A stretch of 64,000 nt of DNA from Obrimoposthia wandeli (Eukaryota), in the NCBI GenBank assembly GCA_977020255.1, contig CDROCS010000253.1, positions 2,790,001 to 2,854,000 on the forward strand, read 5' to 3'. The position numbers and the translations under genes were made by a program. This document shows positions 15,547 through 57,195 of the stretch, piece after piece; position 1 is the first letter of the stretch; every line of letters begins with the position of its first letter. Below the pieces are notes generated by a model, which saw nothing but the letters and a program-made list of their open reading frames with translations, made no database searches and was not told where the DNA came from.

Positions 15547-15564
15547 AACCAACTTTAGTTGGTT
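15547..15564. promoter_or_regulatory. CCAAC-N4-GTTGG operator, perfect palindromic copy
   Basis: AACCAAC-TTTA-GTTGGTT upstream of the acyl-CoA ligase operon. Confidence 0.6.
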
Positions 15565-15625
15565 CCTATGCGATTCTTGATTCGGCAAGCTATCTACTAT
15601 TACAAGCTTGTTGCGGTACGTCTTA

Positions 15626-15686
15626 TATACCCGTTATCCATCAAAGAAGCGCTCTGAAAACAGCATATTGAATGGTGACGGGTATA
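15626..15686. repeat. ERIC-like MITE, short copy
   Basis: TATACCCGTT...GACGGGTATA imperfect terminal inverted repeats. Confidence 0.7.
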
Positions 15687-15871
15687 TGCGGGATGTAATG
15701 AAATAAAAGGGTATCGATAGGTTAATCGATGCCTCTTTAAATAAGGTCATTACTATCACAGTCCAAGGTCTATGGCACGGGATGAATGTCGCACAGTATC
15801 CTTATCAGACTGAGTACAACCTGAGCGATGGTTAGCAGTTTTTAGTTAAAAATAAATAGGAGTTTATAATA

Positions 15872-17437
15872 ATGAATTTAACACAACTTTTACATCGCAA
15901 TGTACTGTTGCGTCCAGATCAAGACGCAGTATTTTATCGAGATAGATCTTTGACCTACCGCGAGTTGGCGAAACGGGTCGCATGCTTAGCAGGTGGACTG
16001 CGTAATATTGGTGTTAAAGAAGGCGAAAGCGTGCCTTTGTTGTCGATGAATTCCAGCCGCTATCTAGAATATCTGTTTGCCGTTCCTTGGGCTGGGGCAG
16101 CCTACAATTTGGTCAATGTGCGCTGGAGTGTTGCAGAAATAGCTTTCTCACTAGTTGATTCTAGTGCTCGCTTTCTTGTTGTGGATGACACCTTTGCTTC
16201 AATGGTGGCAGAGATAAAAGAAAAGACACCTCTACTGGAGTTTGTGATTTATGCCGGTGATGGCGAATGTCCTGAAGGCATGCTTAGCTATGAGCTATTG
16301 CTTGCAGAGGCGGAGCCGATTGAGGATGCTTATCGAAGCGGTGATGATCTTGCAGGTATCTTTTATACAGGCGGCACTACTGGTACGCCTAAAGGCGTTA
16401 TGTTGAGTCATACAAATTTAATGACGTTCGCATTGACAGGCGCTCAGATGAGTGGATTGTCTGCTCAGCCCCGTTGGTTGAATTGTGCCCCTTTGTTTCA
16501 TATCGCAGGTCTAGGTATGTTGTTGATGTCGTTTATGCTGGGGGGAACTCAAATTATATTACCTGCGTTTACTCCAGCTGAGGTGATAAAAACAATTCGT
16601 GAGCAGGACGTGACGGATATGTTGCTTGTTCCAACGATGATACAAATGCTGCTAGATTATCCCGATTTTGATGTGGATGACTTTGCGAGTATGCAACATA
16701 TTCTTTACGGTGCCTCTCCCATGCCTCAGGGAACGATGAATAAAGCGCTGAAGCAATTGCCTGATGTTGGTTTTATTCAAGGTTATGGCATGACCGAATG
16801 TGGTTTGATCTCTATTTCAGCTGCTAGCAACCACACTGCAGAAGGGAATGAGTCGGGACGGATCCGTAGTGCAGGTCTCCCTGGCCCTGTACAGCAAGTT
16901 CGTATTGTCGATGAGCTTGGTGTTCCAGTGCCTTCTGGTACTGTTGGTGAAATTACGCTTCGTGGGCCAAATATTATGCTGGGTTATTGGGGAAAACCTG
17001 AGTTAACTCAAAAAGCTGTTGTTGATGGTTGGTTGCACACAGGAGATGGTGGCTACATGGATGAGCAAGGCTATATCTTTGTGGTTGATCGAGTGAAGGA
17101 TATGATTATCTCAGGGGGAGAGAATATTTATTCTGCCGAAGTGGAGACAATTATTTCGCAACATCCGGCTGTCGCCCAGTGTGCGGTGATCGGTATTCCC
17201 TCTGAAGATTGGGGTGAGACAGTTCATGCAGTGATCGTACTTGCTCCAGGAGAAGAAAACTCAGATCGTCTGACCACCGAACAGCTTCGTGACTTCTGTA
17301 AAGTACATATTGCCAGTTACAAATGTCCTAAATCTATGGCCCTTATTGATTCTCTACCTATTTCTGGAGCGGGAAAAATACTCAAAAACGAATTACGTAA
17401 GCCTTATTGGGAAGGGCGTGAGGCACAGGTGTCCTAA
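15872..17437 (+). CDS. Long-chain acyl-CoA synthetase (AMP-binding)
   Basis: YTGGTTGTPKG, GYGMTE, HTGD, DRVKDMIISGGEN, GKILK motifs. Confidence 0.9.
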   Translation: MNLTQLLHRNVLLRPDQDAVFYRDRSLTYRELAKRVACLAGGLRNIGVKEGESVPLLSMNSSRYLEYLFAVPWAGAAYNLVNVRWSVAEIAFSLVDSSARFLVVDDTFASMVAEIKEKTPLLEFVIYAGDGECPEGMLSYELLLAEAEPIEDAYRSGDDLAGIFYTGGTTGTPKGVMLSHTNLMTFALTGAQMSGLSAQPRWLNCAPLFHIAGLGMLLMSFMLGGTQIILPAFTPAEVIKTIREQDVTDMLLVPTMIQMLLDYPDFDVDDFASMQHILYGASPMPQGTMNKALKQLPDVGFIQGYGMTECGLISISAASNHTAEGNESGRIRSAGLPGPVQQVRIVDELGVPVPSGTVGEITLRGPNIMLGYWGKPELTQKAVVDGWLHTGDGGYMDEQGYIFVVDRVKDMIISGGENIYSAEVETIISQHPAVAQCAVIGIPSEDWGETVHAVIVLAPGEENSDRLTTEQLRDFCKVHIASYKCPKSMALIDSLPISGAGKILKNELRKPYWEGREAQVS

Positions 17438-17460
17438 CAATACTGACTAAGTAAGTCAGC

Positions 17461-17525
17461 TATACCCAAACTACTTCAAGATTCAGCAGTCGGACCTTGT
17501 AGCATCTTCAAGTGGTACGGGTATA
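17461..17525. repeat. ERIC-like MITE, short copy inside the operon
   Basis: TATACCCAAACTACTTCAAGATTC...GCATCTTCAAGTGGTACGGGTATA (19/24 inverted match). Confidence 0.75.
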
Positions 17526-17558: not shown

Positions 17559-18329
17559 ATGAAAGAGATAACGAGTGTAGTTCATCTTGAACGTTATCCA
17601 GATGGTGTTGCCACACTAACTATGATGAAGGCAAAAACGCTTAACGCGCTTGACGAGGCGTTATTAGTCGAATTACTAGAAAAGCTTAAAGAAGCAGACG
17701 CTGACGATGATATTAAAGTTGTCATTCTCACCGGAAGCGGCCGCGGATTTTGCTCTGGGGTCGACCTTACGGGTGGTGTATTGCAAGAAAACGCAGATAC
17801 ACTGGATGACTGGATCAGACAATTCGCCAACCCGGTTGTAGAATACATACGATCCATGTCTACAGTGGTGATTGCGGCTGTAAATGGCGTTGCTGTCGGT
17901 GCTGGTGTTAGCCTTGCGCTTGCCTGTGACATTGTCATGTCTGCAGCATCAGCCCGATATTTTCTTAGCTTTGCCAAAGTTGGAGTGGCTATGGATATGG
18001 GAGCATCGTGGATTTTGAGCAGAAGAATCGGCTCGATGCGTACTGCTGCCTTAACTATGTCTGCTGAGTGTTTCAATGCAGAAATGGCGTTGCAGTGGGG
18101 GCTATGTTATGAAGTCGTGGATGATGCCGAACTGATGTTGCGAACTTGTGAATTTGCCAGCCGAATTGCCAGCCGACCGATCTTAACGCTGGGAGCTTTG
18201 AAGTCCCAGATAAATTACGCGAATAAAGCAACGCTATCTGAAACGTTGGACTATGAAGCACGGATGCAGGGAATGCTAATGAGAACGGATCAGACACAAC
18301 AACTCATCAAAGAGTTTTCAGAGCGGTAA
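17559..18329 (+). CDS. Enoyl-CoA hydratase/isomerase (crotonase family, PaaG-like)
   Basis: GRGFCSGVDL, AAVNGVAVGAGVSLALACD, D-x-G motif. Confidence 0.85.
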   Translation: MKEITSVVHLERYPDGVATLTMMKAKTLNALDEALLVELLEKLKEADADDDIKVVILTGSGRGFCSGVDLTGGVLQENADTLDDWIRQFANPVVEYIRSMSTVVIAAVNGVAVGAGVSLALACDIVMSAASARYFLSFAKVGVAMDMGASWILSRRIGSMRTAALTMSAECFNAEMALQWGLCYEVVDDAELMLRTCEFASRIASRPILTLGALKSQINYANKATLSETLDYEARMQGMLMRTDQTQQLIKEFSER

Positions 18330-25496: not shown

Positions 25497-26465
25497 TTAA
25501 AGCAGGCCCATTAATCTCTTTTGAATTAAGGTGTCTGCTTCTAACATTATGCTATCAATCAACTCCTTACATGTGGGAATATCATTGATCAAGCCAGCGA
25601 CCATACCGCAAGACCATGCGCCAGCATCCATCTCACCGTCCAGCATAACGCGCGGATAGATCCCAGCTACCTCAGCAGCGATATCGTCAAAAGTGATATC
25701 TTTACCCAGCTCAGCTTCTTTTTGGATAACTCTTTCTACAGCCACATTGTTAAGTACCCGTTCGGTGTTTCGTAAGGGGCGCATCACCAATCGGGTGTCG
25801 AGCTCACTTGCTTTCACGATGGCATCTTTCACATTTTGATGCACGGGCGCCTCTTTGGTAGCGATAAAACGGGTACCCATGTTCATACCTTCGGCACCCA
25901 TAGCAATCGCAGCAACCAGAGAGCGGGCATCTGCCATACCGCCAGAGGCAATGAATGGTATTTTCAGCTCATCGGCAGCGCGAGGCAGTAAAATCATGTT
26001 CGGAATATCATCCTCTCCAGGGTGACCACCGCATTCAAAACCATCGATAGAAAGTGCATCGACGCCCATTGCTTGTGCTTTCAATGCGTGGCGAATAGAC
26101 GTGCATTTGTGAATGACAATAATACCTGCGTCCTTCAATACAGGTAAATACTCAAGAGGATTACCTGCTGTTTCTACTATTTTCACCCCGCCTTTGATAA
26201 TAGCGTCGATATAACCAGGGTAATCCGGTGCATTAACGATTGGCAGAAAGGTCAGGTTGACGGCGAAAGGCTTATCCGTCATGTCGTTGCACTTAGCTAT
26301 TTCATTGGCTAAATCAGCTGCAGTTCTCTGGGTCAATCCTGTTATTGTACCGAGTCCCCCTGCGTTCGAAACAGCCGCCGCCATTTCGGCGAAACCAACG
26401 TAGTGCATTCCTCCCTGCATAATAGGGTGTTCAATGCCAAATAATTCAGTAATCTGTGTTCTCAT
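25497..26465 (-). CDS. Nitronate monooxygenase-family FMN enzyme, PA1024-like NADH:quinone reductase
   Basis: HPIMQGGM, DGFECGGHPGEDD, NMGTRF; closely resembles P. aeruginosa PA1024 as recalled. Confidence 0.8.
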   Translation of the reverse strand: MRTQITELFGIEHPIMQGGMHYVGFAEMAAAVSNAGGLGTITGLTQRTAADLANEIAKCNDMTDKPFAVNLTFLPIVNAPDYPGYIDAIIKGGVKIVETAGNPLEYLPVLKDAGIIVIHKCTSIRHALKAQAMGVDALSIDGFECGGHPGEDDIPNMILLPRAADELKIPFIASGGMADARSLVAAIAMGAEGMNMGTRFIATKEAPVHQNVKDAIVKASELDTRLVMRPLRNTERVLNNVAVERVIQKEAELGKDITFDDIAAEVAGIYPRVMLDGEMDAGAWSCGMVAGLINDIPTCKELIDSIMLEADTLIQKRLMGLL

Positions 26466-26649: not shown

Positions 26650-26726
26650 TATCAGCAGTGAAATTTTCCAAGGAACTTTGTACAGCGGATGGGATACTTA
26701 CCTTAATATACTGGCTCTAATTAGGC

Positions 26727-26744
26727 AGCCAACTAAAGTTGTAA
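26727..26744. promoter_or_regulatory. CCAAC-NAAA-GTT operator, degenerate copy
   Basis: AGCCAAC-TAAA-GTTGTAA upstream of the PA1024-like gene. Confidence 0.4.
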
Positions 26745-28944: not shown

Positions 28945-29211
28945 TATACCCGTTCCACTTGAAGATGCTCGTTTCAGGAAGTCTGAGCGATTCATAATCA
29001 AGGCGCATTTTTTTATTAAGGGTTATTCCCTTAAAAATAAATGTAACGCTGAGTATGATTTGCTCAGCCTTCCCCAAGGGGCTGGTTTAGAAACGCTTTA
29101 TGCTGCGTTATTGATTTCGACAATAGAATGACTATTCTCTTCAATCAATGCCTTGCCTAAAGGCGTTTCTAATTCCAGCTGAATCATGCATCTTCAAGTG
29201 GAACGGGTATA
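28945..29211. mobile_element. 267-bp ERIC-like MITE with perfect 24-bp TIRs
   Basis: TATACCCGTTCCACTTGAAGATGC...GCATCTTCAAGTGGAACGGGTATA; TA at both ends; no ORF. Confidence 0.85.
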
Positions 29212-37205: not shown

Positions 37206-37223
37206 AGCCAACCAAAGTTGGGG
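37206..37223. promoter_or_regulatory. CCAAC-NAAA-GTTGG operator
   Basis: AGCCAAC-CAAA-GTTGGGG in the divergent DUF1302/SDR intergenic region. Confidence 0.55.
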
Positions 37224-37292: not shown

Positions 37293-37338
37293 AAACCAAC
37301 GAAAGTTTGTTGTTTGAAAGCTTCGGGTTGGGCAACAT
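37293..37338 (+). promoter_or_regulatory. Operator plus sigma70-like promoter of the SDR-thiolase-MaoC operon
   Basis: AAACCAACGAAAGTTTG immediately followed by TTGTTT-N17-CAACAT. Confidence 0.7.
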
Positions 37339-38451: not shown

Positions 38452-38486
38452 ACGTAAATCTTTCAATTTTTAATAGGAATACAATA

Positions 38487-39753: not shown

Positions 39754-40197
39754 ATGTTAGACCGTAGCAAAGTAGGTCATGAATTTGCTTCTTTTAGCGC
39801 AGATATTGAAAAAGGACGGCTGAAATTTTTCGCCAAAGCCATTGGTGAAAAAAACTCACTATATAGCGACGAACTGGTGGCACGTGCTGCTGGTTACAAA
39901 AACATTCCTGCACCACCAACGTTTCCTTTCGTGCTGGATTTGGAGGGACCTGAATTTTGGCCTGTGCTGGATTTGTTGGATATGGATATTGGTCGGGTTC
40001 TGCACGGCTCTCAGGAATTTGAATACCTAGGCATGATTTATGCTGGCGATACCATCACAGTAACCTCGATACTGAAAGATATGTTTGATAAAAAGGGTGG
40101 CGCCCTTGAGTTTATTGTGATGGAAAGCTCGTATACAAATCAACATGGTGAGCTGGTTTCTAAGGCTGTTAATACGTTAGTTTACCGTACCCCTTGA
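39754..40197 (+). CDS. MaoC-like hot-dog dehydratase, N-terminal-half type subunit
   Basis: FAKAIGE, APPTF, LHGSQEFEY; AAGGA RBS before MLDRSK. Confidence 0.8.
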   Translation: MLDRSKVGHEFASFSADIEKGRLKFFAKAIGEKNSLYSDELVARAAGYKNIPAPPTFPFVLDLEGPEFWPVLDLLDMDIGRVLHGSQEFEYLGMIYAGDTITVTSILKDMFDKKGGALEFIVMESSYTNQHGELVSKAVNTLVYRTP

Positions 40198-40214
40198 GTG
40201 AGAGGAATGTGAAA

Positions 40215-40616
40215 ATGTCTGATATTAAAATAGGGACTGAAATCCCATCATTGAATTTACCGCCGATCTCTCGTGCTACGCTAGCACTTTATGCGGGTGC
40301 TTCGGGAGATCATAACCCAATACATATAGACAGTGACTTTGCCAAAAAGGCGGGTATGCCAGATGTGTTCGCGCACGGTATGTTATCTATGGCTTATTTG
40401 GGACGTATGCTTACCGACTGGAAGCCTCAGTCACAGCTGCGCAAGTTCAGCAATCGTTTTGCGTCGATGACACAACTACAAGATGTGATTACCTGTAGTG
40501 GTAAGGTAGTTGAAATATTCGAAGAAAAGGGCGAGAGACGTGCCCGACTAGAAATTGTTGCAGCCAAGCGTGATGGTACTCAAACCTTAGTGGGCGAAGC
40601 TATAATTACCTTGTAA
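40215..40616 (+). CDS. MaoC (R)-specific enoyl-CoA hydratase, catalytic subunit
   Basis: YAGASGDHNPIHID...AHGMLSM hydratase-2 motif. Confidence 0.85.
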   Translation: MSDIKIGTEIPSLNLPPISRATLALYAGASGDHNPIHIDSDFAKKAGMPDVFAHGMLSMAYLGRMLTDWKPQSQLRKFSNRFASMTQLQDVITCSGKVVEIFEEKGERRARLEIVAAKRDGTQTLVGEAIITL

Positions 40617-40709: not shown

Positions 40710-41011
40710 TCCGAGCGTAAGGTTAAAACCCTCATCTTTAGATGAGTAGCTTTAGCTAGCTGTTGCCTTTAGGGTGCAGTAGGAAAGAAACCTCATTATG
40801 TAAGTGGTAACTGAGTTAACTGAAAAGATATTGTATGATTGTTTTTGTCGAGGCAAGCATCGACCTACGTAATACAGCGGCTTAGCTTTTGTAGGTCGGC
40901 ACGAGCGTAGCGAGGCCCGACAATTTAACTTGGAGGATATGAGTACAGCGATCACTATAGGACTTTCAGTCCGCAAAAGAACCTACCGTATTTAGACGGT
41001 ATGTAGTTCAG
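40710..41011. mobile_element. Possible non-autonomous IS200/IS605-derived element (about 300 bp)
   Basis: Two TTTAG-loop hairpins (CTCATC-TTTA-GATGAG at 40731-40746; TACCGT-ATTTAG-ACGGTA at 40984-41001) ending GTAGTTCA; no transposase. Confidence 0.4.
40846..40922. repeat. Inverted doublet of GTAG-family REP sequences (REPIN-like)
   Basis: Minus strand GTAGGTCGATGCTTGCCTCGACA and plus strand GTAGGTCGGCACGAGCGTAGCGAGGCCCGACA, 22 bp apart. Confidence 0.6.
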
Positions 41012-41047
41012 TTGGTTTTTTACTCGTAACAAAACTGCTCTTAATCA

Positions 41048-41093
41048 AAACCAACGAAAGTTTGTTGTTTCAGTTTTTATGGTTGGGCATAGT
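41048..41093 (+). promoter_or_regulatory. Operator plus sigma70-like promoter of the ADH gene
   Basis: AAACCAACGAAAGTTTG + TTGTTT-N17-CATAGT. Confidence 0.75.
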
Positions 41094-41234
41094 TTTATTG
41101 TGAACGGTCGCTGTCAGGATGAACACTGATTTGCACAATCCCTAAAAGGACAAAGCAAAAAAGGTGACCTGATGATAGCCGCCCCCTCAATAAAAACTCA
41201 AGCCATTTTGAGTCAAACTATAGGTGTGATAACA

Positions 41235-42356
41235 ATGACTAATGATGATATAAGACATGAAGCGACAGCCGCAATTGCCAGGGGATCTTCTGACCCCTTA
41301 ACTTTTGAACAAGTCACGTTGCAATCACCCAGAGCAGATGAAGTACTGATTAAAATTGTTGCTTCTGGGATATGCCATACGGATCTGGTTTGCCTTCATC
41401 AGGAATTACCTGTGCCACTTCCTATGGTGCTAGGACACGAAGGCGCAGGAATTGTTGTTGAGATAGGCAGCGCAGTGCAAGATCTAGTGCCAGGTGACCA
41501 TGTTGTTTTATCGTTCAATTCTTGCGGTCAATGTCCTTCTTGTGATAGCGAATTGCCTTCCTACTGTTACCATTTTATGGAGAATAACTTCAGCGGAAGT
41601 CGTAGCGATGGTACCGGCACTATGGAACAAAATGGTGAAGCGGTTAACGCTAATTTCTTCGGACAATCTTCTTTTGCAACAATGGCTATTGCCAACGTTA
41701 GAAATACGGTGAAAGTTAGCAAAGATCTGCCGCTCGAAATGCTTGCTCCATTGGGCTGTGGCATACAGACCGGTGCAGGGACTGTTTTTAACTCGTTGCC
41801 AGTGACCGAAAAGCATTCGCTGGCTATATTCGGCGGAGGGGCTGTTGGTCTCAGTGCACTGATGGCTGCCAAGTTAATAGGCGCTGCTCCTCTTATTTTG
41901 GTCGAGCCTTTAGCAGACAGAAGAGCTTTGGCGCTAGAGCTTGGAGCCGATCATGTAATTGACCCATTTGCTGTGGAAAATGTTGTCGAAGAGATAAAAA
42001 AATTAGTCGGTGGAGTTGACTTTAGCCTAGAAATGACAGGCATTCCAGCAGTCGCCAAACAATGCATTGATGTCCTTAAGCCATTAGGAACTTGTGCACT
42101 CGTTGGTGCAGCACCCGCCGATGCTGAAATAAGCATTAATATCATGGAAATGCTCGTTACCGGAAGAAAGATCGTTGGCATAGTGGAAGGGGACGCGCAG
42201 CCGAGAACGTTTATTCCTCAGCTCATTAAATATTATGAAGAAGGGCGTTTCCCTTTTGACCGCCTCATTGACTTCTTCCCTTTCGAATCGCTAAACGAAG
42301 CGATAAAAGCGCAGGAGAGCGGACAAAGTATCAAACCTGTCGTTCGTATGGGTTAG
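41235..42356 (+). CDS. Zn-dependent alcohol dehydrogenase, aryl-alcohol/geraniol dehydrogenase type
   Basis: GICHTD, GHEGAG, CGQCPSC...C, FFGQSSFAT, LGCGIQTGAG; AGGTG RBS before the ATG at 41235. Confidence 0.85.
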   Translation: MTNDDIRHEATAAIARGSSDPLTFEQVTLQSPRADEVLIKIVASGICHTDLVCLHQELPVPLPMVLGHEGAGIVVEIGSAVQDLVPGDHVVLSFNSCGQCPSCDSELPSYCYHFMENNFSGSRSDGTGTMEQNGEAVNANFFGQSSFATMAIANVRNTVKVSKDLPLEMLAPLGCGIQTGAGTVFNSLPVTEKHSLAIFGGGAVGLSALMAAKLIGAAPLILVEPLADRRALALELGADHVIDPFAVENVVEEIKKLVGGVDFSLEMTGIPAVAKQCIDVLKPLGTCALVGAAPADAEISINIMEMLVTGRKIVGIVEGDAQPRTFIPQLIKYYEEGRFPFDRLIDFFPFESLNEAIKAQESGQSIKPVVRMG

Positions 42357-42436: not shown

Positions 42437-42467
42437 GGGCTGTTTTAATCGACAGCCCATTTTTTTC
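42437..42467 (+). terminator. Rho-independent terminator after ADH
   Basis: GGGCTGT-loop-ACAGCCC followed by a T run. Confidence 0.75.
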
Positions 42468-42513: not shown

Positions 42514-42559
42514 AAACCAACGAAAGTTTGCTGTTAGATTTACTATAGTTGGTCATAAT
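42514..42559 (+). promoter_or_regulatory. Operator plus sigma70-like promoter of the rubredoxin fusion gene
   Basis: AAACCAACGAAAGTTTG + CTGTTA-N17-CATAAT. Confidence 0.75.
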
Positions 42560-42730
42560 TTTTTAATGAACAGTCGCTGGTAGAATTGAAAGGGGCTGTG
42601 AACTATTGAGTACATGCTTTAATGACTGGATAAGCGAAAAACGCAAATATTTTAAAGTCTAGGCTTTAAAATAACTAGGCCTTAAAGAAATGATGAATGT
42701 TATTCCTGAGTACTGTTGCAGAGGTGAAAT

Positions 42731-44152
42731 ATGAGTTACAAAATTTTAGAGTGTTTAGTCTGTGGATTTATCTACGATGAGGGCAAAGGTAATCCAAAAG
42801 AAGGCCTCCCTGCAGGAACTCGTTGGGAAGATGTGCCTGATGATTGGACATGTCCAGATTGTGGTGTAGGAAAGGCAGATTTTGAAATGGTGGCTATAAG
42901 CCGTATTGCTGTTGCTACTAAAGAAAAGGTTGCTGAGGTTGCTATTGAATCAGTACCTGCCATAGCGGCTATGTTGGCAGTTCCTACAATTGACTGGGAT
43001 CGTAAACCCGTTGTAATTATTGGTACTGGCTTGGCGGGTTACCATTTGGCGCGTGAGTTCAGAAAACAAGACAAAGAAACACCGCTGATAATGCTGACTG
43101 CTGATGATGGTCGTTTCTATTCTAAACCCATGATCTCGACAGCTTTTGCCAAAGCTAAACAACCCGATCAACTTGCCAATGCTACGGCGGCTGATATGGC
43201 TGAAGAGTTACAGGCAGATATACGAATATTTAGTAAAGTTACAGAAATAGATGCTGATTCACAGATTTTAAAGGTAGGTGAAGACAGCATTGAGTATGGA
43301 AAGCTTGTATTAGCTTCCGGTGCTAAATGTACTGAAGCACCACTGAAGGGAAATGGCTTGAGCCGAGTTTACAGTGTTAATGATTTATTAGATTACACTC
43401 GGTTCCGTACCTCATTGGTTGGCAAGAAAAAGATATTAATTATTGGGGCAGGTTTAATTGGCTCGGAGTATGCCAATGATATGATCCAGTCTGGCTTCAT
43501 GATTGAGGTTGTTGAGCCTATGCCTAGTGTACTCGGGACGTTATTGCCTGAACAGGCCTCACTTGCGGTTCAGAAAAGTCTTGAACAGGCAGGCGTAAAA
43601 TATCATTTTGGTACTGTGGTTGAGAAGGTGGATAAATTTGGAAATGGAATTCAGGCTACATTGGCTAATGGTACTGTTATTGAAGCCGATGCGGTGTTGT
43701 CTGCTATTGGCGTTCGCCCTGATTTAACACTCGCTAGTCTTACCAAATTGGATACTAATCGAGGCATCCTAACCGATCGTTCATTGCAAACCAGTGCTAA
43801 AAAAATCTATGCACTAGGCGATTGTGCAGAGGTCGATGGCAACTTGTTGTTTTATGTTGCTCCGTTAATGGAAAGTGCCAGAGTGTTGGGTAAAGTGCTC
43901 AGTGGTCAGCAAGCTGAAGTACATTATGGTGTGATGCCGGTGATGATAAAAACGACCCTGTGTCCGGTGGTGGTATCGCCGCCACCGAGGGACGCAGAAG
44001 GGGAGTGGCATGTTAAAGTTGACCGTTGTAATGTACTGGCAAGGTTTGTTTCACCAGAAGGCAAGTTACTGGGATTTGCGTTGACGGGTGATGCGACAAA
44101 AGAAAAGGATGGGTTAAGTGCCGAGACACAGCCACTTATGAGTTATGTCTAA
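42731..44152 (+). CDS. Rubredoxin--NAD(P)H:rubredoxin reductase fusion (RubA-RubB-like)
   Basis: CLVCG...CPDCG rubredoxin, linker, then IIGTGLAGY...YSKPMIS, GAGLIG, ALGDCAE. Confidence 0.9.
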   Translation: MSYKILECLVCGFIYDEGKGNPKEGLPAGTRWEDVPDDWTCPDCGVGKADFEMVAISRIAVATKEKVAEVAIESVPAIAAMLAVPTIDWDRKPVVIIGTGLAGYHLAREFRKQDKETPLIMLTADDGRFYSKPMISTAFAKAKQPDQLANATAADMAEELQADIRIFSKVTEIDADSQILKVGEDSIEYGKLVLASGAKCTEAPLKGNGLSRVYSVNDLLDYTRFRTSLVGKKKILIIGAGLIGSEYANDMIQSGFMIEVVEPMPSVLGTLLPEQASLAVQKSLEQAGVKYHFGTVVEKVDKFGNGIQATLANGTVIEADAVLSAIGVRPDLTLASLTKLDTNRGILTDRSLQTSAKKIYALGDCAEVDGNLLFYVAPLMESARVLGKVLSGQQAEVHYGVMPVMIKTTLCPVVVSPPPRDAEGEWHVKVDRCNVLARFVSPEGKLLGFALTGDATKEKDGLSAETQPLMSYV

Positions 44153-44378: not shown

Positions 44379-47240
44379 ATGGTCAAACGAAGCGAAAGTG
44401 AAGACGCCTTGTGCTGTCAGTTACTTTTACACTATAGTCTTAGATATGTTTTCAAAAATAATGAATTATTGTCGATGTTAAATAAAGAAGAAAAACAAAA
44501 CTCGCTGCATCAGACCACAGTTATACGCGGAAAACTCCTTAAACCTAAGGTATCTGAAAACCTTATTAATAGAGAGCTTGTTAACACATTTTCCGTTAAA
44601 ATTATGAAAGGCATAAAAGCAGCCCTAGTAGTTGCACCTGCTGGCTATGGCAAGTCTATATTACTAGCCCAGAGCTCAGATGTTTTAACAGATAAAGGTT
44701 ATAATTGTTATTGGCTAAGCATTGATAACAAAGACAACGATCCTCTGAGATTTCTATCCCTTTTAATCGCTTCAGTAGACACACAGGATCCGTTTGAACG
44801 TGACTCTAATACGAGCTACTTTGGTGCGGAACGTAAGATGGCGATCGATTATCTTATCTCAGAAATTGCTAATGTTCTGGAAAATGATTCTTGTCGGCAC
44901 GCATTTTTCATTGATGACTATCATACAATCAGCAATCCGGAAGTTCATAGTATTCTGGAACGGTTAATCAATTATTCACCACAGCAGACGGTTTTTGTCA
45001 TTTCAAGTCGCAATGAACCTGGCTTGGCGCTTAATGCGTTAAAAGTTCGCGAAGAGGTATTTCAGTTAACGAGGAAAGATTTGGCCTTTGCGCTGGATGA
45101 GACCGAGAAGTTTCTTAATGCCTCCAAGCAACTGGGACTTAACAGTAAGCTTGTATCCGCGCTTGCTAATCGAACTGAAGGTTGGGTTGCTGGGCTGCAA
45201 TTAGCATCTTTGGCGTTGGTTGGAAGTTCTAATTATGAAAAATTTATTAATGAGTTTACCGGCACTGATCGCGATGTCATGGATTATCTTGGTGAGGTAA
45301 TTCTCGCTAGACAAAATGACGAAGTTAGGCGATTTTTACTGTGGTCATCAGTGCTTGAACGTATGAGTGCTGATCTAGTTAATTATGTACTTAAAATAGA
45401 CTCAGCCCAAACTATGCTTGAACAGCTAGAGGATAAGAGTCTATTTATTATTCCACTTGATAGAAACCGTATCAGGTATCGTTATCATCATCTTTTTGGT
45501 GATTTTCTGAGGAATGTTTTAAATAAAGAATACCCAGGTAAAAGAGAAAAAATTTGTCGTCGGGCATATACATGGTATAAAGATCATGGTAATAATCATG
45601 AGGCTATAAACTATGCATTAATCGCCCAAGATTACAGTCAGGCGCTAGATCTGATTGCCCGTATCTCCAAAAAGCTCTTACTCGAATCGGGTGAAAACTG
45701 GACGTTACTAAACTGGATACAGCAGCTGCCTGATGGATATGTATTGAACAAACCGGTAATCAGTGTGGCATATTGCTGGTCGCTGGTTTTTTCTCGGCAA
45801 TATCCTCAAGCCCGAGAACAAATGGATCTGCTAGAGCGCCACTGTGGACAGAATTCGGACAAGCTCAAACAGGTAGAGCTTGATCAGCTGCGTAATACCA
45901 TCAAATTAATTCTATGTCTTATTGAAGCCGCCAGTGATAACTCGGTGTATGCCAGCGCTCTGCTCAAAGAGTGGGTTGCCGAAAATCCTTCTGGCAAATT
46001 TCAGGACTTGCTCACCGCCACTGTACTACAGGCCTATAATTCTTTGTCTACATTTGAGTTAGACTTAGGTGAAGTTGCTGCTAATAAAGCTATATCGATT
46101 GGCGCGCAAAGTTCTATTGGTTATCTGGAGGCTTGGGCACATGCGGTTGCGGGTTTAATAAAAGTACAGCGGGCCAACCTGAACGGAGCAGCAAAACATT
46201 ATATTAAAGGACTGAACTGTAATAAGGAAAACGCAAATGAGTTTTCGTATATGGGCTCATTAAACGCCGTATTACTTGCCGAGGTTTATTACGAGCAAAA
46301 TGAAGTAGCCAAGGCAGAAAAACTGCTGGACAATCGCTTTGAGTATATCGATAGCGAGGCTGTGGTGGAGGTGGCTTTTGCCGGTTACCGAGTGATGGCA
46401 AATATACAGTTATTGAAGTCTGGTCTTGATGCGGCCTTGAATGTTATTCATTTAGGCCAAGAGTCTGCCGATCGCATACGACTACCGAGACTTAAAGCAA
46501 TGCTCGCTGCGGAGGAAATTAGCCACCTGCTACAATTCGGCAAGCGTAAAGAAGCACAAGTGGTTGCCAAAGACCTCGGTTTCGACGAATCGCGAGCGCC
46601 AACATTAGATCAGGATTCTCGACAGGTTTTTCAGGAAATACGAGAGCTAGTTCGGGCAGAGCTTAATCTGCATAGTAACTTGCCGAAAAAGGCATTGGTT
46701 ATTTTAAATACACAAATTTTGCAGCGTGAAGAGACTGGGCGGCATCTTCGTTTAATGGAACTGTTGTTGCTACGTAGTAGGGCATTGCATGCGCTTAAAC
46801 TGACAGATGACGCGGTGGCTGATGTCTATCGAGCATTGGAACTTGCGGCGAAAGGCGGTTTTTACCGACTATTTCTTGATGCCGGTAGTGAAATCCACCA
46901 GCTCTTGCGAATTGTAATGAAAGGTGATGCCAGTAAGCAGACAGAAAGTACACTGATGTTTCTGGGTAAAATTAATGAATTATTACTTGCTGATCATGAA
47001 GATAAACAAAGTAAAAGTAAACATGACCTGACGCCTGATACTCTGCTTGAGCCAATGACCAAGCGAGAAAGACAAATGTTGGACTTTATTAAAACCGGAG
47101 AAACTAATAAGGATATTGCGGACAAGTTGTTTATTTCAGAACAGACTGTCAAATGGCATTTACATCAACTCTATAAAAAATTGGGTGTAAAAAATAGAAC
47201 CAGTGCTATTGCCAAAGCGAGTGCTCTCTTGTTGATATAG
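44379..47240 (+). CDS. MalT-like (STAND) LuxR-family transcriptional activator
   Basis: APAGYGKS Walker A, FIDDYH Walker B, TEGWVAGLQL, RYHHLF, C-terminal LuxR HTH. The true start may be ATG 44475. Confidence 0.9.
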   Translation: MVKRSESEDALCCQLLLHYSLRYVFKNNELLSMLNKEEKQNSLHQTTVIRGKLLKPKVSENLINRELVNTFSVKIMKGIKAALVVAPAGYGKSILLAQSSDVLTDKGYNCYWLSIDNKDNDPLRFLSLLIASVDTQDPFERDSNTSYFGAERKMAIDYLISEIANVLENDSCRHAFFIDDYHTISNPEVHSILERLINYSPQQTVFVISSRNEPGLALNALKVREEVFQLTRKDLAFALDETEKFLNASKQLGLNSKLVSALANRTEGWVAGLQLASLALVGSSNYEKFINEFTGTDRDVMDYLGEVILARQNDEVRRFLLWSSVLERMSADLVNYVLKIDSAQTMLEQLEDKSLFIIPLDRNRIRYRYHHLFGDFLRNVLNKEYPGKREKICRRAYTWYKDHGNNHEAINYALIAQDYSQALDLIARISKKLLLESGENWTLLNWIQQLPDGYVLNKPVISVAYCWSLVFSRQYPQAREQMDLLERHCGQNSDKLKQVELDQLRNTIKLILCLIEAASDNSVYASALLKEWVAENPSGKFQDLLTATVLQAYNSLSTFELDLGEVAANKAISIGAQSSIGYLEAWAHAVAGLIKVQRANLNGAAKHYIKGLNCNKENANEFSYMGSLNAVLLAEVYYEQNEVAKAEKLLDNRFEYIDSEAVVEVAFAGYRVMANIQLLKSGLDAALNVIHLGQESADRIRLPRLKAMLAAEEISHLLQFGKRKEAQVVAKDLGFDESRAPTLDQDSRQVFQEIRELVRAELNLHSNLPKKALVILNTQILQREETGRHLRLMELLLLRSRALHALKLTDDAVADVYRALELAAKGGFYRLFLDAGSEIHQLLRIVMKGDASKQTESTLMFLGKINELLLADHEDKQSKSKHDLTPDTLLEPMTKRERQMLDFIKTGETNKDIADKLFISEQTVKWHLHQLYKKLGVKNRTSAIAKASALLLI

Positions 47241-47427: not shown

Positions 47428-48099
47428 TTATTTTTTCAATTTTATAATCAGTTTTTCTTCATTTACCTGCAATAAATTTGCAAATAATGACTTTACCGAG
47501 GCTAGATAATGCCCGGTTGCTACTTCATGAGAAATTTTTTGATCGTAGTTAGCTATAAATAACTTGGGTTGCGCGGCAGGCATGCTCACCATGCCAATCA
47601 ACATGTTGATAATTTCGGATGAATTCATACCTTTTAATAATTTTTGCTCGCAACATTGTTCAATTAAAATGCGCAGGTCTTTATCAACCAATTGAAATTG
47701 ATTAAAAAAATAATCAAAATGTATCTGTTTACTCATACTAAATTGAATAACAAGTTTTAGAATTACCGGATTATCGACTAAGTTGTCTATAATTTTTGAG
47801 ATCATCAAAAAGGCTGCGTCATTGGCCGGTAAATCATCTCGAAAAGAATCCGTTAATTCTATTCGTTCATTCATCACTTCAGCCATTATCTGATCAGCCA
47901 CAGCATACCAAACTTGCTCTTTATTGCCAAAATGATGACGGATTAAGCCATGACTGACCTGTGCCGCAATAGCTAAATTTCGTATGCTAGTTTTATCATA
48001 GCCTTGTTCTGCGAAAAGTTGCTGGGCACATTTTAAAATCCGTAGTTTAGTGGCGTCTTGTTGCTTCATATTAAAGGGACTTCTTTGGTTATAGACCAT
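47428..48099 (-). CDS. TetR/AcrR-family regulator
   Basis: ILKCAQQLFAEQGYDKTSIRNLA...HHFGNKEQV HTH; divergent from the RND pump. Confidence 0.9.
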   Translation of the reverse strand: MVYNQRSPFNMKQQDATKLRILKCAQQLFAEQGYDKTSIRNLAIAAQVSHGLIRHHFGNKEQVWYAVADQIMAEVMNERIELTDSFRDDLPANDAAFLMISKIIDNLVDNPVILKLVIQFSMSKQIHFDYFFNQFQLVDKDLRILIEQCCEQKLLKGMNSSEIINMLIGMVSMPAAQPKLFIANYDQKISHEVATGHYLASVKSLFANLLQVNEEKLIIKLKK

Positions 48100-48246: not shown

Positions 48247-48301
48247 ACTATACGATTGTATAGTTTATTAATATGAGTATAATACTATACAGTTGTATAG
48301 C
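48247..48301. promoter_or_regulatory. Tandem palindromic TetR operator candidates
   Basis: ACTATAC-GATT-GTATAGT (48247-48264) and ACTATAC-AGTT-GTATAGC (48284-48301). Confidence 0.75.
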
Positions 48302-54773: not shown

Positions 54774-55018
54774 TAAACTGCTCTATTTAAAGCTTGTATA
54801 GTCTTTGAATAGGTAGGGGAAGTGTTCTCTATGGGGGGATAACCGCCTCATTGAGGCGTAGGGATCAGAAAGTAGGTTGGGTAGATCTAAAGTTTTAAAA
54901 TCAGTAGAAAAAAGGAGGACTAATAATTAGCCCTCAAAAATGCAAACTTTATTGAGGCTTCATTCTAATAACATCATCAAGTCGAATAATTTCGCCTTGA
55001 TAATGTTATTAGTAATGG

Positions 55019-56206
55019 TTAAAGTATTTCGATTGCAATAGCAGTCGCTTCACCGCCGCCAATACACATGGCTGCAACACCGCGTTTTTTACCTAAACGC
55101 TTAAGTGCATAGATTAAGCTAATGAGTATACGTGAACCCGATGAGCCAAGAGGGTGGCCAAGCGCACAGGCGCCACCATGAATGTTAACACGTTTAGGAT
55201 CGAGCTTAAGCTCTTGCGTTGCTAGCATAGTTACTGCCGCAAAGGCTTCATTAATTTCCCATAAATCCACATCGTTGATTGACCAATTGGCTTTATCTAA
55301 CACTTTATTGATGGCACCAAATGGTGCAATAACAAACTCATTGGTCGCTTGTGCATGAGTCGAGTGCCCTTTGATACGAGCTAATGGCGCTAAACCTTGC
55401 TCTGTTGCTTGGCTTTCGCGCATTAACACAACGGCTGATGCGCCATCTGAGATTGAACTGGCATTCGCCGCCGTCACCGTGCCGTCTTTCTTAAATGCAG
55501 GACGCAGGGTCGGAATTTTAGCAATATTGGCATTGCCTGGCTGCTCGTCGACGCTAATTACGGTTTCGCCTTTACGAGAGGTAATGGTGACAGGTGATAT
55601 TTCTGCTTCAAACCAACTTTCTTTTATAGCTTGGTTGGCACGACTTAATGATTCAATAGCAAATTCATCCATCGCCTCACGGGTTAGACCATAATCGTCG
55701 GCGCAATCTTGAGCGAAAACACCCATTAATTTACCGGTGTAGGCATCTTCGAGGCCATCGAAAAACATTGAGTCATAAACTTGACCATGCCCCATGCGCA
55801 AACCACCACGCCCTTTAGGCAATAGATAAGGCGAGGCGCTCATATTTTCCATGCCGCCGGCTACGATGATATCGCTTGTACCTGCTTTGATTTGGTCATG
55901 AGCGTCCATTACGGCTTTCATGCCAGAGCCACACATTTTATTAATAGTAACGCAACCAGCGGAAAGCGGCAGGCCAGCACCTAATGAGGCTTGACGAGCG
56001 GGTGCTTGTTTCATTGCACCGGGTAGTACACAGCCCATAATAACTTGTTCTACACTTTTCGGATCGATACCAGCGTTGGCAACCGCCGCTTTAATGGCTG
56101 TTGCGCCTAAGTCAGGTGCTGTAACTTCACTCAATGACCCCATCAAACCGCCCATTGGGGTGCGCGCGCCGCTAACGATAACGACTGAATCTTGATTAGT
56201 AGACAT
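55019..56206 (-). CDS. Acetyl-CoA C-acyltransferase (thiolase), branched-chain acyl-CoA type
   Basis: INKMCGSG, NEAF, GHPLGSSG, CIGGG. Confidence 0.9.
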   Translation of the reverse strand: MSTNQDSVVIVSGARTPMGGLMGSLSEVTAPDLGATAIKAAVANAGIDPKSVEQVIMGCVLPGAMKQAPARQASLGAGLPLSAGCVTINKMCGSGMKAVMDAHDQIKAGTSDIIVAGGMENMSASPYLLPKGRGGLRMGHGQVYDSMFFDGLEDAYTGKLMGVFAQDCADDYGLTREAMDEFAIESLSRANQAIKESWFEAEISPVTITSRKGETVISVDEQPGNANIAKIPTLRPAFKKDGTVTAANASSISDGASAVVLMRESQATEQGLAPLARIKGHSTHAQATNEFVIAPFGAINKVLDKANWSINDVDLWEINEAFAAVTMLATQELKLDPKRVNIHGGACALGHPLGSSGSRILISLIYALKRLGKKRGVAAMCIGGGEATAIAIEIL

Positions 56207-56239
56207 AATTATTTCTCTCCTTAAACTTGTTTAATAAAA

Positions 56240-57013
56240 TTAAATGTTTTTCCATTGGGGTTTACGCTTTTCTAGGAAGGCGCTAACACCTTCTTTTTGA
56301 TCTTGGGTATCAAATAAATCGGCAAAATATTCACGCTCTAATAACAGGCCTTTCTCCCATATAGAGCGTGATTCTTGAATCAGCGATTTGCATGCGGCAA
56401 CGCTCGATGGGCTTTGTTGGGCAGCTTGACTGGCTAAATCAAGTGCAGTGTTCTTGGCTTGACCTTTAGCGACAACTTCTTCAACTAGACCGATCTCTTT
56501 GGCTTTCGCTGCATTAATGCGTTCACCACATAAAATAATTCGTTTAGCCCAGCCTTCACCCGTTAGACTCAATAGACGCTGTGTGCCACCGCCACAAGGC
56601 AATAACCCAACCTTGGCTTCTGGTAGGGCGAGTAAAATTTGTTCTTCGGCGATTCGAATATCGCAAGCCAGAGCCGCTTCTAAGCCGCCACCCATGGTAT
56701 AGCCATTAAGTGCCGCTATAGTGACCCCTCTAAAGTTGCTCAATGCATCAAAAGCCTTACCGAATATGCTTGATATGTTTCGTGCTTTACCTTTGTCGCC
56801 ATCACTAAACATATTTAAGTCGGCGCCAGCACTAAAGAATTTATCGCCCTGACCTGTTAATACCAGCGCATATACATTTTTGTTATTGTTAAGTTCATCA
56901 ATCGTTTGCGTTAGTGCAGTAAGGCTTTCAGTATCCCAAGTATTTGCAGGTGGATTATTAATGGTAAGTAGCGCTGTGTGATCAATAATTTCAACGAGTA
57001 GCTTATCTGACAT
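56240..57013 (-). CDS. Enoyl-CoA hydratase (crotonase)
   Basis: FFSAGADL, MGGGLE, LPEAKVGL (both catalytic Glu), FLEKRKP. Confidence 0.9.
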   Translation of the reverse strand: MSDKLLVEIIDHTALLTINNPPANTWDTESLTALTQTIDELNNNKNVYALVLTGQGDKFFSAGADLNMFSDGDKGKARNISSIFGKAFDALSNFRGVTIAALNGYTMGGGLEAALACDIRIAEEQILLALPEAKVGLLPCGGGTQRLLSLTGEGWAKRIILCGERINAAKAKEIGLVEEVVAKGQAKNTALDLASQAAQQSPSSVAACKSLIQESRSIWEKGLLLEREYFADLFDTQDQKEGVSAFLEKRKPQWKNI

Positions 57014-57178
57014 AAAGAGATCTCTTTTGTAAAAATATATACCAATACTATAGACAGCTTTAAAGTCTATTTAAATGACAAAACACAACGATATAACTCA
57101 CTAAACATTACATATCCATGTGTGTAGATATGTAAAGTTAGCTATTGTCCCAACAGGAAGCTAACCAGACTGTTAATA

Positions 57179-57195
57179 CAAACTTTCGTTGGTTT
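57179..57195 (-). promoter_or_regulatory. Operator of the hydratase-thiolase operon
   Basis: Exact AAACCAACGAAAGTTTG on the minus strand, oriented towards the operon. Confidence 0.75.

What the first reader, a model, noticed from the sequence alone, without database searches (positions are those of the whole stretch)
15547..57195. Seven-site CCAAC-NAAA-GTT(G/T) operator defines an island-wide regulon
Seen in sequence: an exact 17-mer AAACCAACGAAAGTTTG occurs four times (37293, 41048, 42514 on +; 57179-57195 on -), each upstream of and oriented towards a catabolic unit. Related palindromic copies occur at 15547 (AACCAAC-TTTA-GTTGGTT), 26727 and 37206. In three copies the box abuts a -35-like hexamer with a -10-like hexamer 17 bp on (TTGTTT-N17-CATAGT, CTGTTA-N17-CATAAT, TTGTTT-N17-CAACAT), and GTTGG(G/T)CA sits exactly 17 nt after the box. 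The ADH and rubredoxin promoters also share TGAAC(G/A)GTCGCTG at the same offset. Knowledge: MalT/AlkS-type activators bind next to -35. Inference: the MalT-like regulator at 44379 activates seven sites, linking uptake, oxidation and beta-oxidation genes spread over 42 kb into one system. The alternative is PsrA (CAAAC-N4-GTTTG), which differs by one base in the left half.
Basis: partly seen in the sequence, partly recalled or inferred. Interest (0 to 1): 0.82.

Follow-up and report, generated by a model that had tools for sequence, protein, structure and literature searches.

The report
Operator of a MalT-like lipid-catabolism regulon
A conserved 18-bp palindrome marks about eight promoters for uptake, oxidation and beta-oxidation genes; it travels across marine bacteria with one MalT/AlkS-type regulator gene, so it is very probably that regulator's binding site, an ordinary mechanism but a binding site I found no description of.

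Summary
The exact 17-mer occurs four times in the window and a fifth time 26 kb downstream. The three palindromic relatives are at the stated places.

The full site is an 18-bp palindrome, AACCAAC-NAAA-GTTGGTT. On the 4.68-Mb bacterial chromosome that holds the window, the core pattern occurs seven times. All seven lie within 75 kb.

Orthologues of the MalT-like regulator (51-93% identity) were examined in seven further loci, including the complete Thalassotalea fonticola genome. The same box always lies in intergenic DNA upstream of the same gene set, although gene order differs. That set is ALDH, ADH, rubredoxin-reductase, acyl-CoA synthetase, SDR/thiolase, DUF1302, a membrane hydroxylase and a FabK-like reductase. 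No other regulator gene is conserved there.

Relatives without the regulator lack the motif. PsrA and the adjacent TetR each have a different operator of their own. A conserved -10 element 22-27 nt downstream puts the box centre near -42.5, the class II activator position.

This is a new member of a known kind. Binding and activation are inferred, not shown.

The parts
44475..47240 (+). MalT/AlkS-type (STAND NTPase - WHD - TPR - GerE/LuxR HTH) regulator. The likely true start is M33 of the 44379 ORF, since orthologues are 919-921 aa.
   Evidence: Pfam TPR_MalT and GerE; NCBIfam MalT model aligned end to end but below its cut-off. Walker A sequence APAGYGKS. Orthologue lengths. Start checked.
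15547..15564 (+). Box 1, a perfect palindrome (28.9 bits). Predicted -10 CAAGCT at 15586-15591. Target: acyl-CoA synthetase 15872-17437 and ECH 17559-18329.
   Evidence: Orthologous boxes lie upstream of the 521-aa AMP-binding gene in L032, L033, L034 and T. fonticola.
26727..26744 (-). Box 2, the weakest (14.2 bits). Predicted -10 TAAGGT at 26700-26705 on the minus strand. Target: FabK/NMO-like reductase 25497-26465.
   Evidence: An orthologous box lies between NMO and Rd-reductase in L032.
37206..37223 (-). Box 3 (19.1 bits). Predicted -10 TAGGAT at 37179-37184 on the minus strand. Target: the DUF1302-DUF1329-BNR-MMPL operon, 37002 down to about 30129.
   Evidence: An identical box and a conserved TAGGAT occur in L028, L029 and L030. 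Pfam.
37294..37311 (+). Box 4 (contains the exact 17-mer at 37293-37309). -10 CAACAT at 37333-37338. Target: SDR / SCPx-type thiolase / two hydratase genes, 37531-40616.
41049..41066 (+). Box 5 (exact 17-mer at 41048-41064). -10 CATAGT at 41088-41093. Leader element TGAACGGTCGCTG at 41101-41113. Target: Zn-ADH 41172-42356.
   Evidence: Orthologous boxes in L028, L029 and L030.
42437..42458 (+). Intrinsic-terminator-like hairpin with a T-run. It separates the ADH unit from the Rd-reductase unit.
42515..42532 (+). Box 6 (exact 17-mer at 42514-42530). -10 CATAAT at 42554-42559. Leader element TGAACAGTCGCTG at 42567-42579. Target: rubredoxin/rubredoxin-reductase fusion 42731-44152, possibly reading through into the regulator gene.
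   Evidence: No terminator-like site was found between 44152 and 44379.
57177..57194 (+). Box 7 (exact 17-mer at 57179-57195 on the minus strand). Canonical -10 TAAGCT at 57216-57221 on the plus strand. Best-supported target: conserved 74-aa membrane ORF 57260-57484 (+). ECH-thiolase 55019-57013 (-) on the other side lacks the canonical geometry.
   Evidence: The box-plus-ORF module is conserved in T. fonticola (L028 13087/13170). In G001:C15 the ECH-thiolase operon has an AraC gene upstream and no box.
47428..48099 (-). Neighbouring TetR gene, rejected as the binder. Its own two operators, ACTATAC-N4-GTATAG(T/C), lie at 48247-48264 and 48284-48301 before the RND pump genes.
   Evidence: This gene is not conserved next to the regulator in any of the seven other loci.

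Best explanation
The 18-bp palindrome AACCAAC-NAAA-GTTGGTT is the operator of the MalT/AlkS-type regulator encoded at 44475-47240. This regulator has a STAND ATPase, a TPR sensor and a C-terminal LuxR/GerE helix-turn-helix. A dimer of the helix-turn-helix domains would bind the two CCAAC half-sites. The box ends where a -35 hexamer would begin, and its centre is about 42.5 bp upstream of the inferred transcription start. The promoters have no good -35 of their own. The regulator therefore most probably acts as a class II activator that recruits RNA polymerase once an unknown hydrophobic substrate, or a metabolite of it, has switched it on. In this chromosome the regulon has eight promoters. 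They serve an acyl-CoA synthetase with an enoyl-CoA hydratase; a FabK-like reductase; the DUF1302/DUF1329/BNR/MMPL envelope system; an SDR/SCPx-thiolase/R-hydratase module; an alcohol dehydrogenase; a rubredoxin-reductase fusion, perhaps with read-through into the regulator gene; a 74-aa membrane ORF; and, outside the window, an aldehyde dehydrogenase/NMO/membrane di-iron hydroxylase operon. Shown here: the sites, their confinement to the cluster, their co-occurrence with the regulator, and the fixed promoter geometry. Inferred: physical binding, activation, and the inducer.
For: (1) Five exact 17-mers whose similarity ends at the box edges.
(2) Every core match on the 4.68-Mb chromosome lies within 75 kb.
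(3) Regulator orthologues of 51-93% identity form a distinct group, followed by a drop to 34%. In all seven of their loci the box recurs in intergenic DNA upstream of ALDH, ADH, SDR, DUF1302, Rd-reductase/NMO, AMP-binding, ECH or hydroxylase genes, whatever the gene order. One L028 hit overlaps the annotated 5' end of the DUF1302 gene. The regulator is the only DNA-binding gene common to these loci.
(4) A matrix built only from this genome's eight sites finds 24 hits in those loci, against 2.1 in shuffles (maximum 6). It finds none near 14 regulators of 38% identity or less (L009-L021, L035), and one weak 14-bit hit in L036.
(5) In the complete T. fonticola genome, 6 of 8 core matches and 5 of 8 matches with at most one mismatch lie within 26 kb around the regulator. 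The other 18 Thalassotalea genomes lack the orthologue and have 0-2 matches, which is control level.
(6) Across 34 box-to-gene sequences, T+17, C+22, A+23 and T+27 are conserved at fixed distance. This is a -10 hexamer CAnnnT, and it puts the box centre at -42.5.
(7) A consensus sigma-70 scan finds no constitutive promoter at these sites.
(8) Precedent: AlkS activates from a 20-bp inverted repeat next to -35 (PMC8784404). In P. putida the LuxR-type PP_0767 is inferred from fitness data to be a positive regulator of DUF1302/DUF1329 genes and a CoA ligase (bioRxiv 10.1101/2020.07.04.188060).
Against: No binding, expression or transcription-start data exist. The available public runs are kept only as assembled contigs. 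Co-occurrence cannot formally separate the regulator from the rest of the conserved cluster. The recognition helix (TVKWHLH) is almost the same in outgroup regulators that have no such box nearby, so what determines specificity is unexplained. In this genome the regulator's own upstream region has no box. One box (57179) has an ambiguous target. One 20.7-bit match lies inside an unrelated ORF 18 kb upstream of the window.
Confidence: 0.72

Rival explanations
1. The same MalT-like protein binds the box but acts mainly as a repressor or a dual regulator. For example, it might occlude the -35 region until an inducer releases it.
For: The box overlaps the position of the -35 hexamer. AlkS represses one of its own promoters (PMC8784404).
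Against: The promoters lack a usable -35 and are missed by a consensus scan. The box centre at -42.5 is the classical activator position. Characterised family members (MalT, AlkS) are activators, and PP_0767 is inferred from fitness data to be one.
Confidence: 0.1
2. PsrA, the TetR-type fatty-acid regulator, binds the box because one half (GTTTG) matches its CAAAC-N4-GTTTG consensus.
For: A psrA orthologue exists on the same chromosome, scoring 309.6 bits, above the family cut-off. The right half of the five exact copies is GTTTG.
Against: The psrA gene's own upstream palindrome is TTAAAC-AGGC-GTTTAA. Across 29 sites the half-site is CCAAC/GTTGG (C at position 4 in 76%), and GTTTG alternates with GTTGG at orthologous promoters. 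The box is confined to the island rather than spread over fad/etf genes. In the genus of the Oleispira-labelled bin G001, 13 of 15 genomes carry PsrA, yet the box stays at control level there.
Confidence: 0.04
3. A different regulator binds the box: the neighbouring TetR (47428), the AraC gene at 23254, or an unlinked factor.
For: TetR dimers typically bind short palindromes. AraC genes often accompany DUF1302 clusters (PMC13499233).
Against: The TetR has its own pair of different palindromes in front of the RND pump. Neither TetR nor AraC is present in the 20-kb neighbourhoods of the seven other regulator loci that carry the box. The one place where an AraC gene precedes ECH-thiolase (G001:C15) lacks the box.
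Confidence: 0.08
4. The box is not a transcription-factor site. It could be a repeat element, a recombination site or a leftover of promoter duplication.
For: Five identical copies on one chromosome. An IS110-family fragment lies next to one of them.
Against: Similarity ends at the box edges. The box is kept at orthologous promoters across genera while the flanks diverge, and it keeps a fixed distance to the -10 element. No Rfam family matches.
Confidence: 0.02

Closest known systems
AlkS / PalkB of Pseudomonas putida GPo1 and Alcanivorax borkumensis (MalT/LuxR-type alkane regulator)
   Same: A large ATP-binding LuxR-family activator encoded in the catabolic cluster. Its operator is an inverted repeat abutting the -35 region of several promoters. 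Targets include a rubredoxin-dependent membrane hydroxylase system, an alcohol dehydrogenase, an aldehyde dehydrogenase and an acyl-CoA synthetase. Positive feedback is possible.
   Different: Sequence relatedness to AlkS could not be tested. The hydroxylase here is a 300-aa FA_desaturase-family protein with weak CrtR-like similarity, not an AlkB. The operator is 18 bp, and I found no description of it. The regulon also covers an envelope uptake system and R-specific beta-oxidation.
MalT of Escherichia coli
   Same: The same domain order (STAND NTPase, winged helix, TPR sensor, GerE helix-turn-helix). The MalT model aligns over residues 48-951.
   Different: The score of 322.9 is below the 537-bit equivalog cut-off. 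From my own knowledge of the family, MalT binds asymmetric MalT boxes in direct or inverted arrays, not an 18-bp palindrome. There are no maltodextrin genes here.
PP_0767 of Pseudomonas putida KT2440 (LuxR-type regulator next to DUF1302/DUF1329 PP_0765/6 and CoA ligase PP_0763)
   Same: A LuxR-type regulator linked to DUF1302/DUF1329 and an acyl-CoA ligase. Mutant fitness data point to positive regulation (bioRxiv 10.1101/2020.07.04.188060). The co-localisation is also noted in PMC13499233.
   Different: Homology to the protein here was not tested. No operator is given in the passages I read. Its phenotypes concern short and medium fatty acids and fatty esters.
LuxR/TraR lux-box promoters
   Same: A GerE-type helix-turn-helix dimer on a palindrome centred at -42.5 and overlapping -35 (class II activation). 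The lux-box position is from my own knowledge.
   Different: Those proteins are small acyl-homoserine-lactone receptors with 20-bp boxes of unrelated sequence.
PsrA operator (CAAAC-N2-4-GTTTG)
   Same: A short palindrome with a 4-nt spacer upstream of beta-oxidation genes. One half-site of the exact 17-mer is identical.
   Different: The consensus half-site here is CCAAC. The site is local to one island, and it co-varies in presence with a LuxR-type regulator rather than a TetR-type one.

Membership tests
MalT/LAL family (large ATP-binding LuxR-type regulators) | N-terminal STAND/AAA NTPase with a Walker A motif | tested here: met
   APAGYGKS near residue 85. The nSTAND_NTPase5 hit is weak, E 1e-6 and below the cut-off. 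Orthologues carry PF25199/PF13401 hits.
MalT/LAL family (large ATP-binding LuxR-type regulators) | MalT-type winged helix plus TPR sensor region | tested here: met
   PF17874 TPR_MalT scores 82.5 bits against a cut-off of 45. PF25873 WHD_MalT is precomputed for all orthologues.
MalT/LAL family (large ATP-binding LuxR-type regulators) | C-terminal GerE/LuxR helix-turn-helix | tested here: met
   PF00196 scores 69.5 bits over residues 892-946. The recognition helix is invariant across the 29 orthologues.
MalT proper (maltose regulon activator, NF003420 equivalog) | Score above the curated equivalog cut-off | tested here: not met
   322.9 bits against a cut-off of 537. The gene context is lipid oxidation, not maltodextrin use.
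AlkS-type alkane-responsive regulon | Inverted-repeat operator adjacent to -35 at several promoters of the cluster | tested here: met
   The 18-bp palindrome ends at about -34 relative to the inferred start, at eight promoters here and 22 in other loci. The AlkS description is from PMC8784404.
AlkS-type alkane-responsive regulon | Control of an AlkB alkane hydroxylase with rubredoxin and rubredoxin reductase | tested here: inconclusive
   A rubredoxin/rubredoxin-reductase fusion is present. The membrane di-iron enzyme gives only a weak CrtR-like hit and no AlkB model.
AlkS-type alkane-responsive regulon | Sequence orthology to AlkS; induction by n-alkanes | not tested
   No AlkS sequence was reachable with the tools. 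The best plasmid-borne homologues are about 27% identical or less and are annotated only as LuxR-type. The inducer needs experiment.
PsrA regulon operator | CAAAC-N2-4-GTTTG sites spread genome-wide before fad/etf genes and before psrA itself | tested here: not met
   Core matches lie only in the 75-kb island. The psrA upstream palindrome is TTAAAC-N4-GTTTAA.
Class II activator-dependent sigma-70 promoter | Activator site centred near -41.5/-42.5, overlapping a poor -35 | tested here: inconclusive
   The conserved A+23/T+27 imply a centre at -42.5, and there are no consensus promoters. No transcription start has been mapped.

The most novel reading that the evidence does not exclude
The box defines a complete, portable and still uncharacterised pathway for branched or isoprenoid lipids such as phytol, pristane or related alcohols. 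The pathway would run in order: a trans-envelope DUF1302/DUF1329/BNR/RND importer; a CrtR-like membrane di-iron hydroxylase fed by a rubredoxin-reductase fusion; ADH and ALDH; an acyl-CoA synthetase; a FabK-like enoyl reductase; and a peroxisome-like R-specific SCPx beta-oxidation module. In some genomes a CoA-transferase family III gene of the racemase-containing family is added. All of it would be switched on by one MalT-type sensor. If so, the regulon would give the first functional assignment for DUF1302/DUF1329 systems in substrate import and for the 74-aa membrane ORF.
Probability: 0.25. Interest if true: 0.7.

Novelty: new member of a known kind. Interest (0 to 1): 0.5.

Why it matters
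This gives a precise, testable regulator-operator pair for a rare, patchily distributed (possibly transferred) catabolic island of cold-water marine gammaproteobacteria. The island is found in 1 of 19 Thalassotalea genomes and 1 of 201 sampled genomes of the family. Because the box marks each transcription unit, it delimits the regulon without experiments. It ties proteins of unknown function to an oxidation and beta-oxidation pathway: DUF1302, DUF1329, the BNR protein, a small membrane ORF and a CrtR-like hydroxylase. The 18-bp box with its activator could also serve as a compact inducible expression or biosensor module, as AlkS/PalkB does. The mechanism itself is conventional.

Tried and rejected
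1. PsrA as the binder. Rejected on distribution, half-site consensus and psrA's own operator.

2. The neighbouring TetR as the binder. Rejected because it has its own distinct double palindrome and is not conserved with the box.

3. AraC as the binder. Not conserved with the box. The AraC-preceded ECH-thiolase operon in G001:C15 has no box.

4. A sigma-54 promoter reading of the downstream GG/GC element. The spacing fits in only one sequence, so I dropped it (reasoning).

5. Using 15 Oleispira genomes as within-genus controls. This turned out to be the wrong genus. GlnRS is 83% identical to T. fonticola but 55-56% to Oleispira. They still serve as regulator-free controls, and Thalassotalea was used as the proper control instead.

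6. Distant regulators of 38% identity or less in 15 loci. No box nearby except one weak 14-bit hit in L036, taken as chance.

7. Transcription-start mapping from public RNA runs. Not possible, because the runs are held only as contigs with small shares.

8. Rfam scan of the window for leader RNAs. Nothing found.

9. Plasmid search for AlkS-annotated or close homologues. The best were about 27% identical or less, annotated only as LuxR-type.

10. Literature search for the motif. No paper describes it.

11. A PWM scan of the whole chromosome was not possible, because the fetch limits cover only about a third of it. Genome-wide statements for weak sites are therefore lower bounds.

Full report
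**Observation.** The exact 17-mer occurs at 37293, 41048 and 42514 (+) and at 57179-57195 (-). None is expected in dinucleotide shuffles. CCAAC-N4-GTTK gives nine strand-matches at seven places, against 0.73 expected. These include the palindromic sites at 15547, 26727 and 37206. The -35/N17/-10 arrangements, the GTTGG(G/T)CA element 17 nt after the box, and the shared TGAAC(G/A)GTCGCTG at 41101 and 42567 are all present as described. All sites are intergenic. An alignment of the exact copies shows that identity begins and ends with the 17-mer. They are therefore not remnants of a duplicated segment.

**Where the window lies.** The window is part of contig C253, 4,677,312 bp, inside a 1.35-Gb multi-contig assembly. 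C253 is a bacterial chromosome. Its GlnRS is 83% identical to that of Thalassotalea fonticola and 55-56% to Oleispira genomes. Its PsrA also scores like the Vibrio/Alteromonadales type. The best DNA match to the island is a 22-kb contig in an 'Oleispira' metagenome bin, 92% identical at the nucleotide level. That contig is therefore either misbinned or recently transferred.

**Extent and specificity in this genome.**
- A fifth exact 17-mer lies at contig position 2880241, window-equivalent 90241. It sits 72 bp upstream of an operon for aldehyde dehydrogenase, an NMO-like protein and a 305-aa FA_desaturase-family membrane hydroxylase.
- On all of C253, CCAAC-NAAA-GTTKG occurs seven times, and the mirror variant adds nothing. 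All seven lie between 2805549 and 2880257. My composition-based expectation is about 0.3.
- The motif is therefore local to a 75-kb stretch, not genome-wide.
- The DNA between the sites includes evident insertions: a TetR-RND-MlaC block, an IS110-family fragment, and about 29 kb of signalling genes.

**Genes served**:
- a long-chain acyl-CoA synthetase with an enoyl-CoA hydratase (box 15547);
- a FabK-like reductase (26727);
- the DUF1302-DUF1329-BNR-MMPL envelope operon (37206);
- an SDR/SCPx-type thiolase/two-hydratase module (37293);
- a zinc alcohol dehydrogenase (41048);
- a rubredoxin/rubredoxin-reductase fusion (42514), followed in the same direction by the regulator gene;
- the ALDH operon outside the window.

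A terminator-like hairpin at 42437-42458 separates the ADH unit from the reductase unit.

**Who binds: comparative test.**
- The regulator (Pfam TPR_MalT and GerE; MalT model aligned end to end but below its cut-off; Walker A present) has a sharply bounded orthologous group. There are 29 proteins at 51-93% identity, then a drop to 34%.
- I fetched seven loci: T. fonticola CP136600 and six metagenomic contigs.
- In every one the box recurs, always in intergenic DNA. One L028 hit overlaps the annotated 5' end of the DUF1302 gene, probably a mis-called start.
- It lies upstream of ALDH (5 loci), ADH, SDR, DUF1302, Rd-reductase/NMO, the 521-aa acyl-CoA synthetase, ECH or the hydroxylase.
- Gene order and orientation differ completely between loci.
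- No box precedes any flanking unrelated gene.
- The regulator is the only DNA-binding gene common to these loci.
- A matrix built only from this genome's eight sites finds 24 hits of at least 12 bits in those 134 kb, against 2.1 (maximum 6) in shuffles. It finds none near 14 more distant MalT-like regulators (L009-L021, L035), and a single 14-bit hit in L036 that I take as chance.
- The pooled consensus is AACCAAC-NAAA-GTTGGTT, about 22 bits. A5, A6 and C7 (and their mirror positions) are invariant, C3 is near-invariant (94%), and the spacer is A/T-only at its two central positions.

**Presence and absence.**
- In the complete T. fonticola genome, six of eight core matches lie at 686-712 kb around the regulator at 705 kb. 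So do five of eight matches to the full palindrome with at most one mismatch. One outlier lies inside gspC and lacks the flanks.
- The site at 686.7 kb precedes the acyl-CoA synthetase-ECH pair, as box 15547 does here.
- The other 18 Thalassotalea genomes have no orthologue and 0-2 matches, which is control level.
- Only 1 of 201 sampled genomes of the family has the orthologue.
- In the genus of the Oleispira-labelled bin G001, the other 14 genomes lack the orthologue and show the pattern at control level. Thirteen of the 15 genomes of that genus carry PsrA.

**Rivals.**
- PsrA is encoded 310 kb away. Its own upstream palindrome is TTAAAC-AGGC-GTTTAA, overlapping a good promoter.
- The GTTTG half of the exact 17-mer alternates with GTTGG at orthologous promoters, so it is a tolerated variant rather than a PsrA signature.
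- The adjacent TetR faces an RND pump and has two copies of a different palindrome, ACTATAC-N4-GTATAG(T/C), at 48247-48301. It is absent from the other loci.
- AraC genes are likewise not conserved there.

**Geometry and mechanism.**
- I aligned 34 box-to-gene sequences without gaps. Downstream positions +17 (T, 78%), +22 (C, 64%), +23 (A, 78%) and +27 (T, 84%) stand out.
- A+23 and T+27 have the spacing of the two most conserved bases of a sigma-70 -10 hexamer. The hexamer is then +22 to +27, the start near +34, and the box spans -51 to -34 with its centre at -42.5.
- The -35 position is occupied by the end of the palindrome and is not otherwise conserved. A consensus scan finds no ordinary promoter at these sites.
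- This is the layout of class II activation, as for lux-box promoters (own knowledge) and for AlkS, whose 20-bp inverted repeat abuts -35 (PMC8784404).
In distant orthologous promoters it reads GATTGGAGCA.

**Direction at each site**.
- The geometry fits the expected gene for 15547, 26727, 37206, 37294, 41049 and 42515.
- For the ALDH box it fits the minus strand, opposite to the 17-mer's orientation.
- For 57179 it fits the plus strand, not ECH-thiolase. There it precedes a 74-aa membrane ORF at 57260-57484. This ORF is conserved together with the box and its flank in T. fonticola, at 72% identity.
- In the G001 contig the ECH-thiolase operon has an AraC gene and no box.
- ECH-thiolase is therefore at best a secondary target.

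**Comparison and novelty.**
- The system works like AlkS/PalkB and belongs to the MalT/LAL family by domain criteria. It is not MalT proper, since it falls below the equivalog cut-off.
- Orthology to AlkS or to P. putida PP_0767 was not testable.
- PP_0767 is reported to be a positive regulator of DUF1302/DUF1329 genes and a CoA ligase (bioRxiv 10.1101/2020.07.04.188060). DUF1302-LuxR co-localisation is noted in PMC13499233.
- No paper in the searchable library describes this operator.
- I class it as a new member of a known kind. It is a well-supported regulon prediction with a conventional mechanism. Its value lies mainly in assigning unknown envelope and hydroxylase genes to one inducible pathway.

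Noticed in passing
whole contig C253 and assembly G000: The window lies on a complete-looking 4.68-Mb bacterial chromosome inside a 1.35-Gb assembly of 6912 contigs. GlnRS is 83% identical to Thalassotalea fonticola. Several other contigs (C506, C3840, C6803, C2866) also encode full PsrA-like proteins, so the assembly holds several bacteria.
   Followed up: partly
L022/L023 (G001:C15, 22 kb): A contig binned as Oleispira is 92% identical in DNA to parts of this island, in a compacted order. Housekeeping GlnRS of that bin is only 56% identical. The contig is either misbinned or a recent horizontal transfer.
   Followed up: partly
window 48247-48301: Two copies of an 18-bp palindrome, ACTATAC-N4-GTATAG(T/C), spaced 37 bp start to start, lie between the TetR gene and the RND pump genes. 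This is probably the TetR's own operator pair.
   Followed up: partly
window 57260-57484 (+): A 74-aa ORF with hydrophobic segments and no Pfam match. It is 72% identical to an unannotated ORF in T. fonticola (L028 13170-13391), and in both genomes a box lies about 65 nt upstream.
   Followed up: partly
window 41101-41113 and 42567-42579: A shared leader element, TGAAC(G/A)GTCGCTG, lies just after the inferred start of the ADH and Rd-reductase transcripts. Its core AC(G/A)GTCG is kept in L028, L029 and L030. Its function is unknown and it has no Rfam match.
   Followed up: partly
L003 6265-6271 (window-equivalent 90265); window 41011-41017: Extra half-sites lie beside full boxes. The ALDH box has an additional half-site (AACCAAC as read on the + strand, GTTGGTT on the strand of the ALDH gene) 5-6 nt from its promoter-distal edge; it is conserved in T. 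fonticola and partly in L033. A GTTGGTT lies 31 bp upstream of the ADH box. This could mean that more than a dimer binds.
   Followed up: no
window 28945-29152; L003 2287-2493 and 6760-6937; G001:C15 6537-6743: A repeat of about 200 bp is present in at least three intergenic copies in this region and once in the related contig, at 80-88% identity.
   Followed up: no
L006 1659-1676 (18.3 kb upstream of the window): A 20.7-bit match to the box lies inside a 906-aa NACHT/STAND NTPase ORF and has no promoter geometry. It is probably a chance match.
   Followed up: partly
non-bacterial contigs of G000: The 14-mer CAAACTAAAGTTGG accounts for most of about 600 matches across the large contigs, against about 40 for the reversed control. 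It looks like part of a host repeat family.
   Followed up: no
window 58369-59235: IS110/IS116-family transposase fragments lie directly beyond the small ORF. This is consistent with the island having been split by insertions, compared with the 26-kb arrangement in T. fonticola.
   Followed up: no
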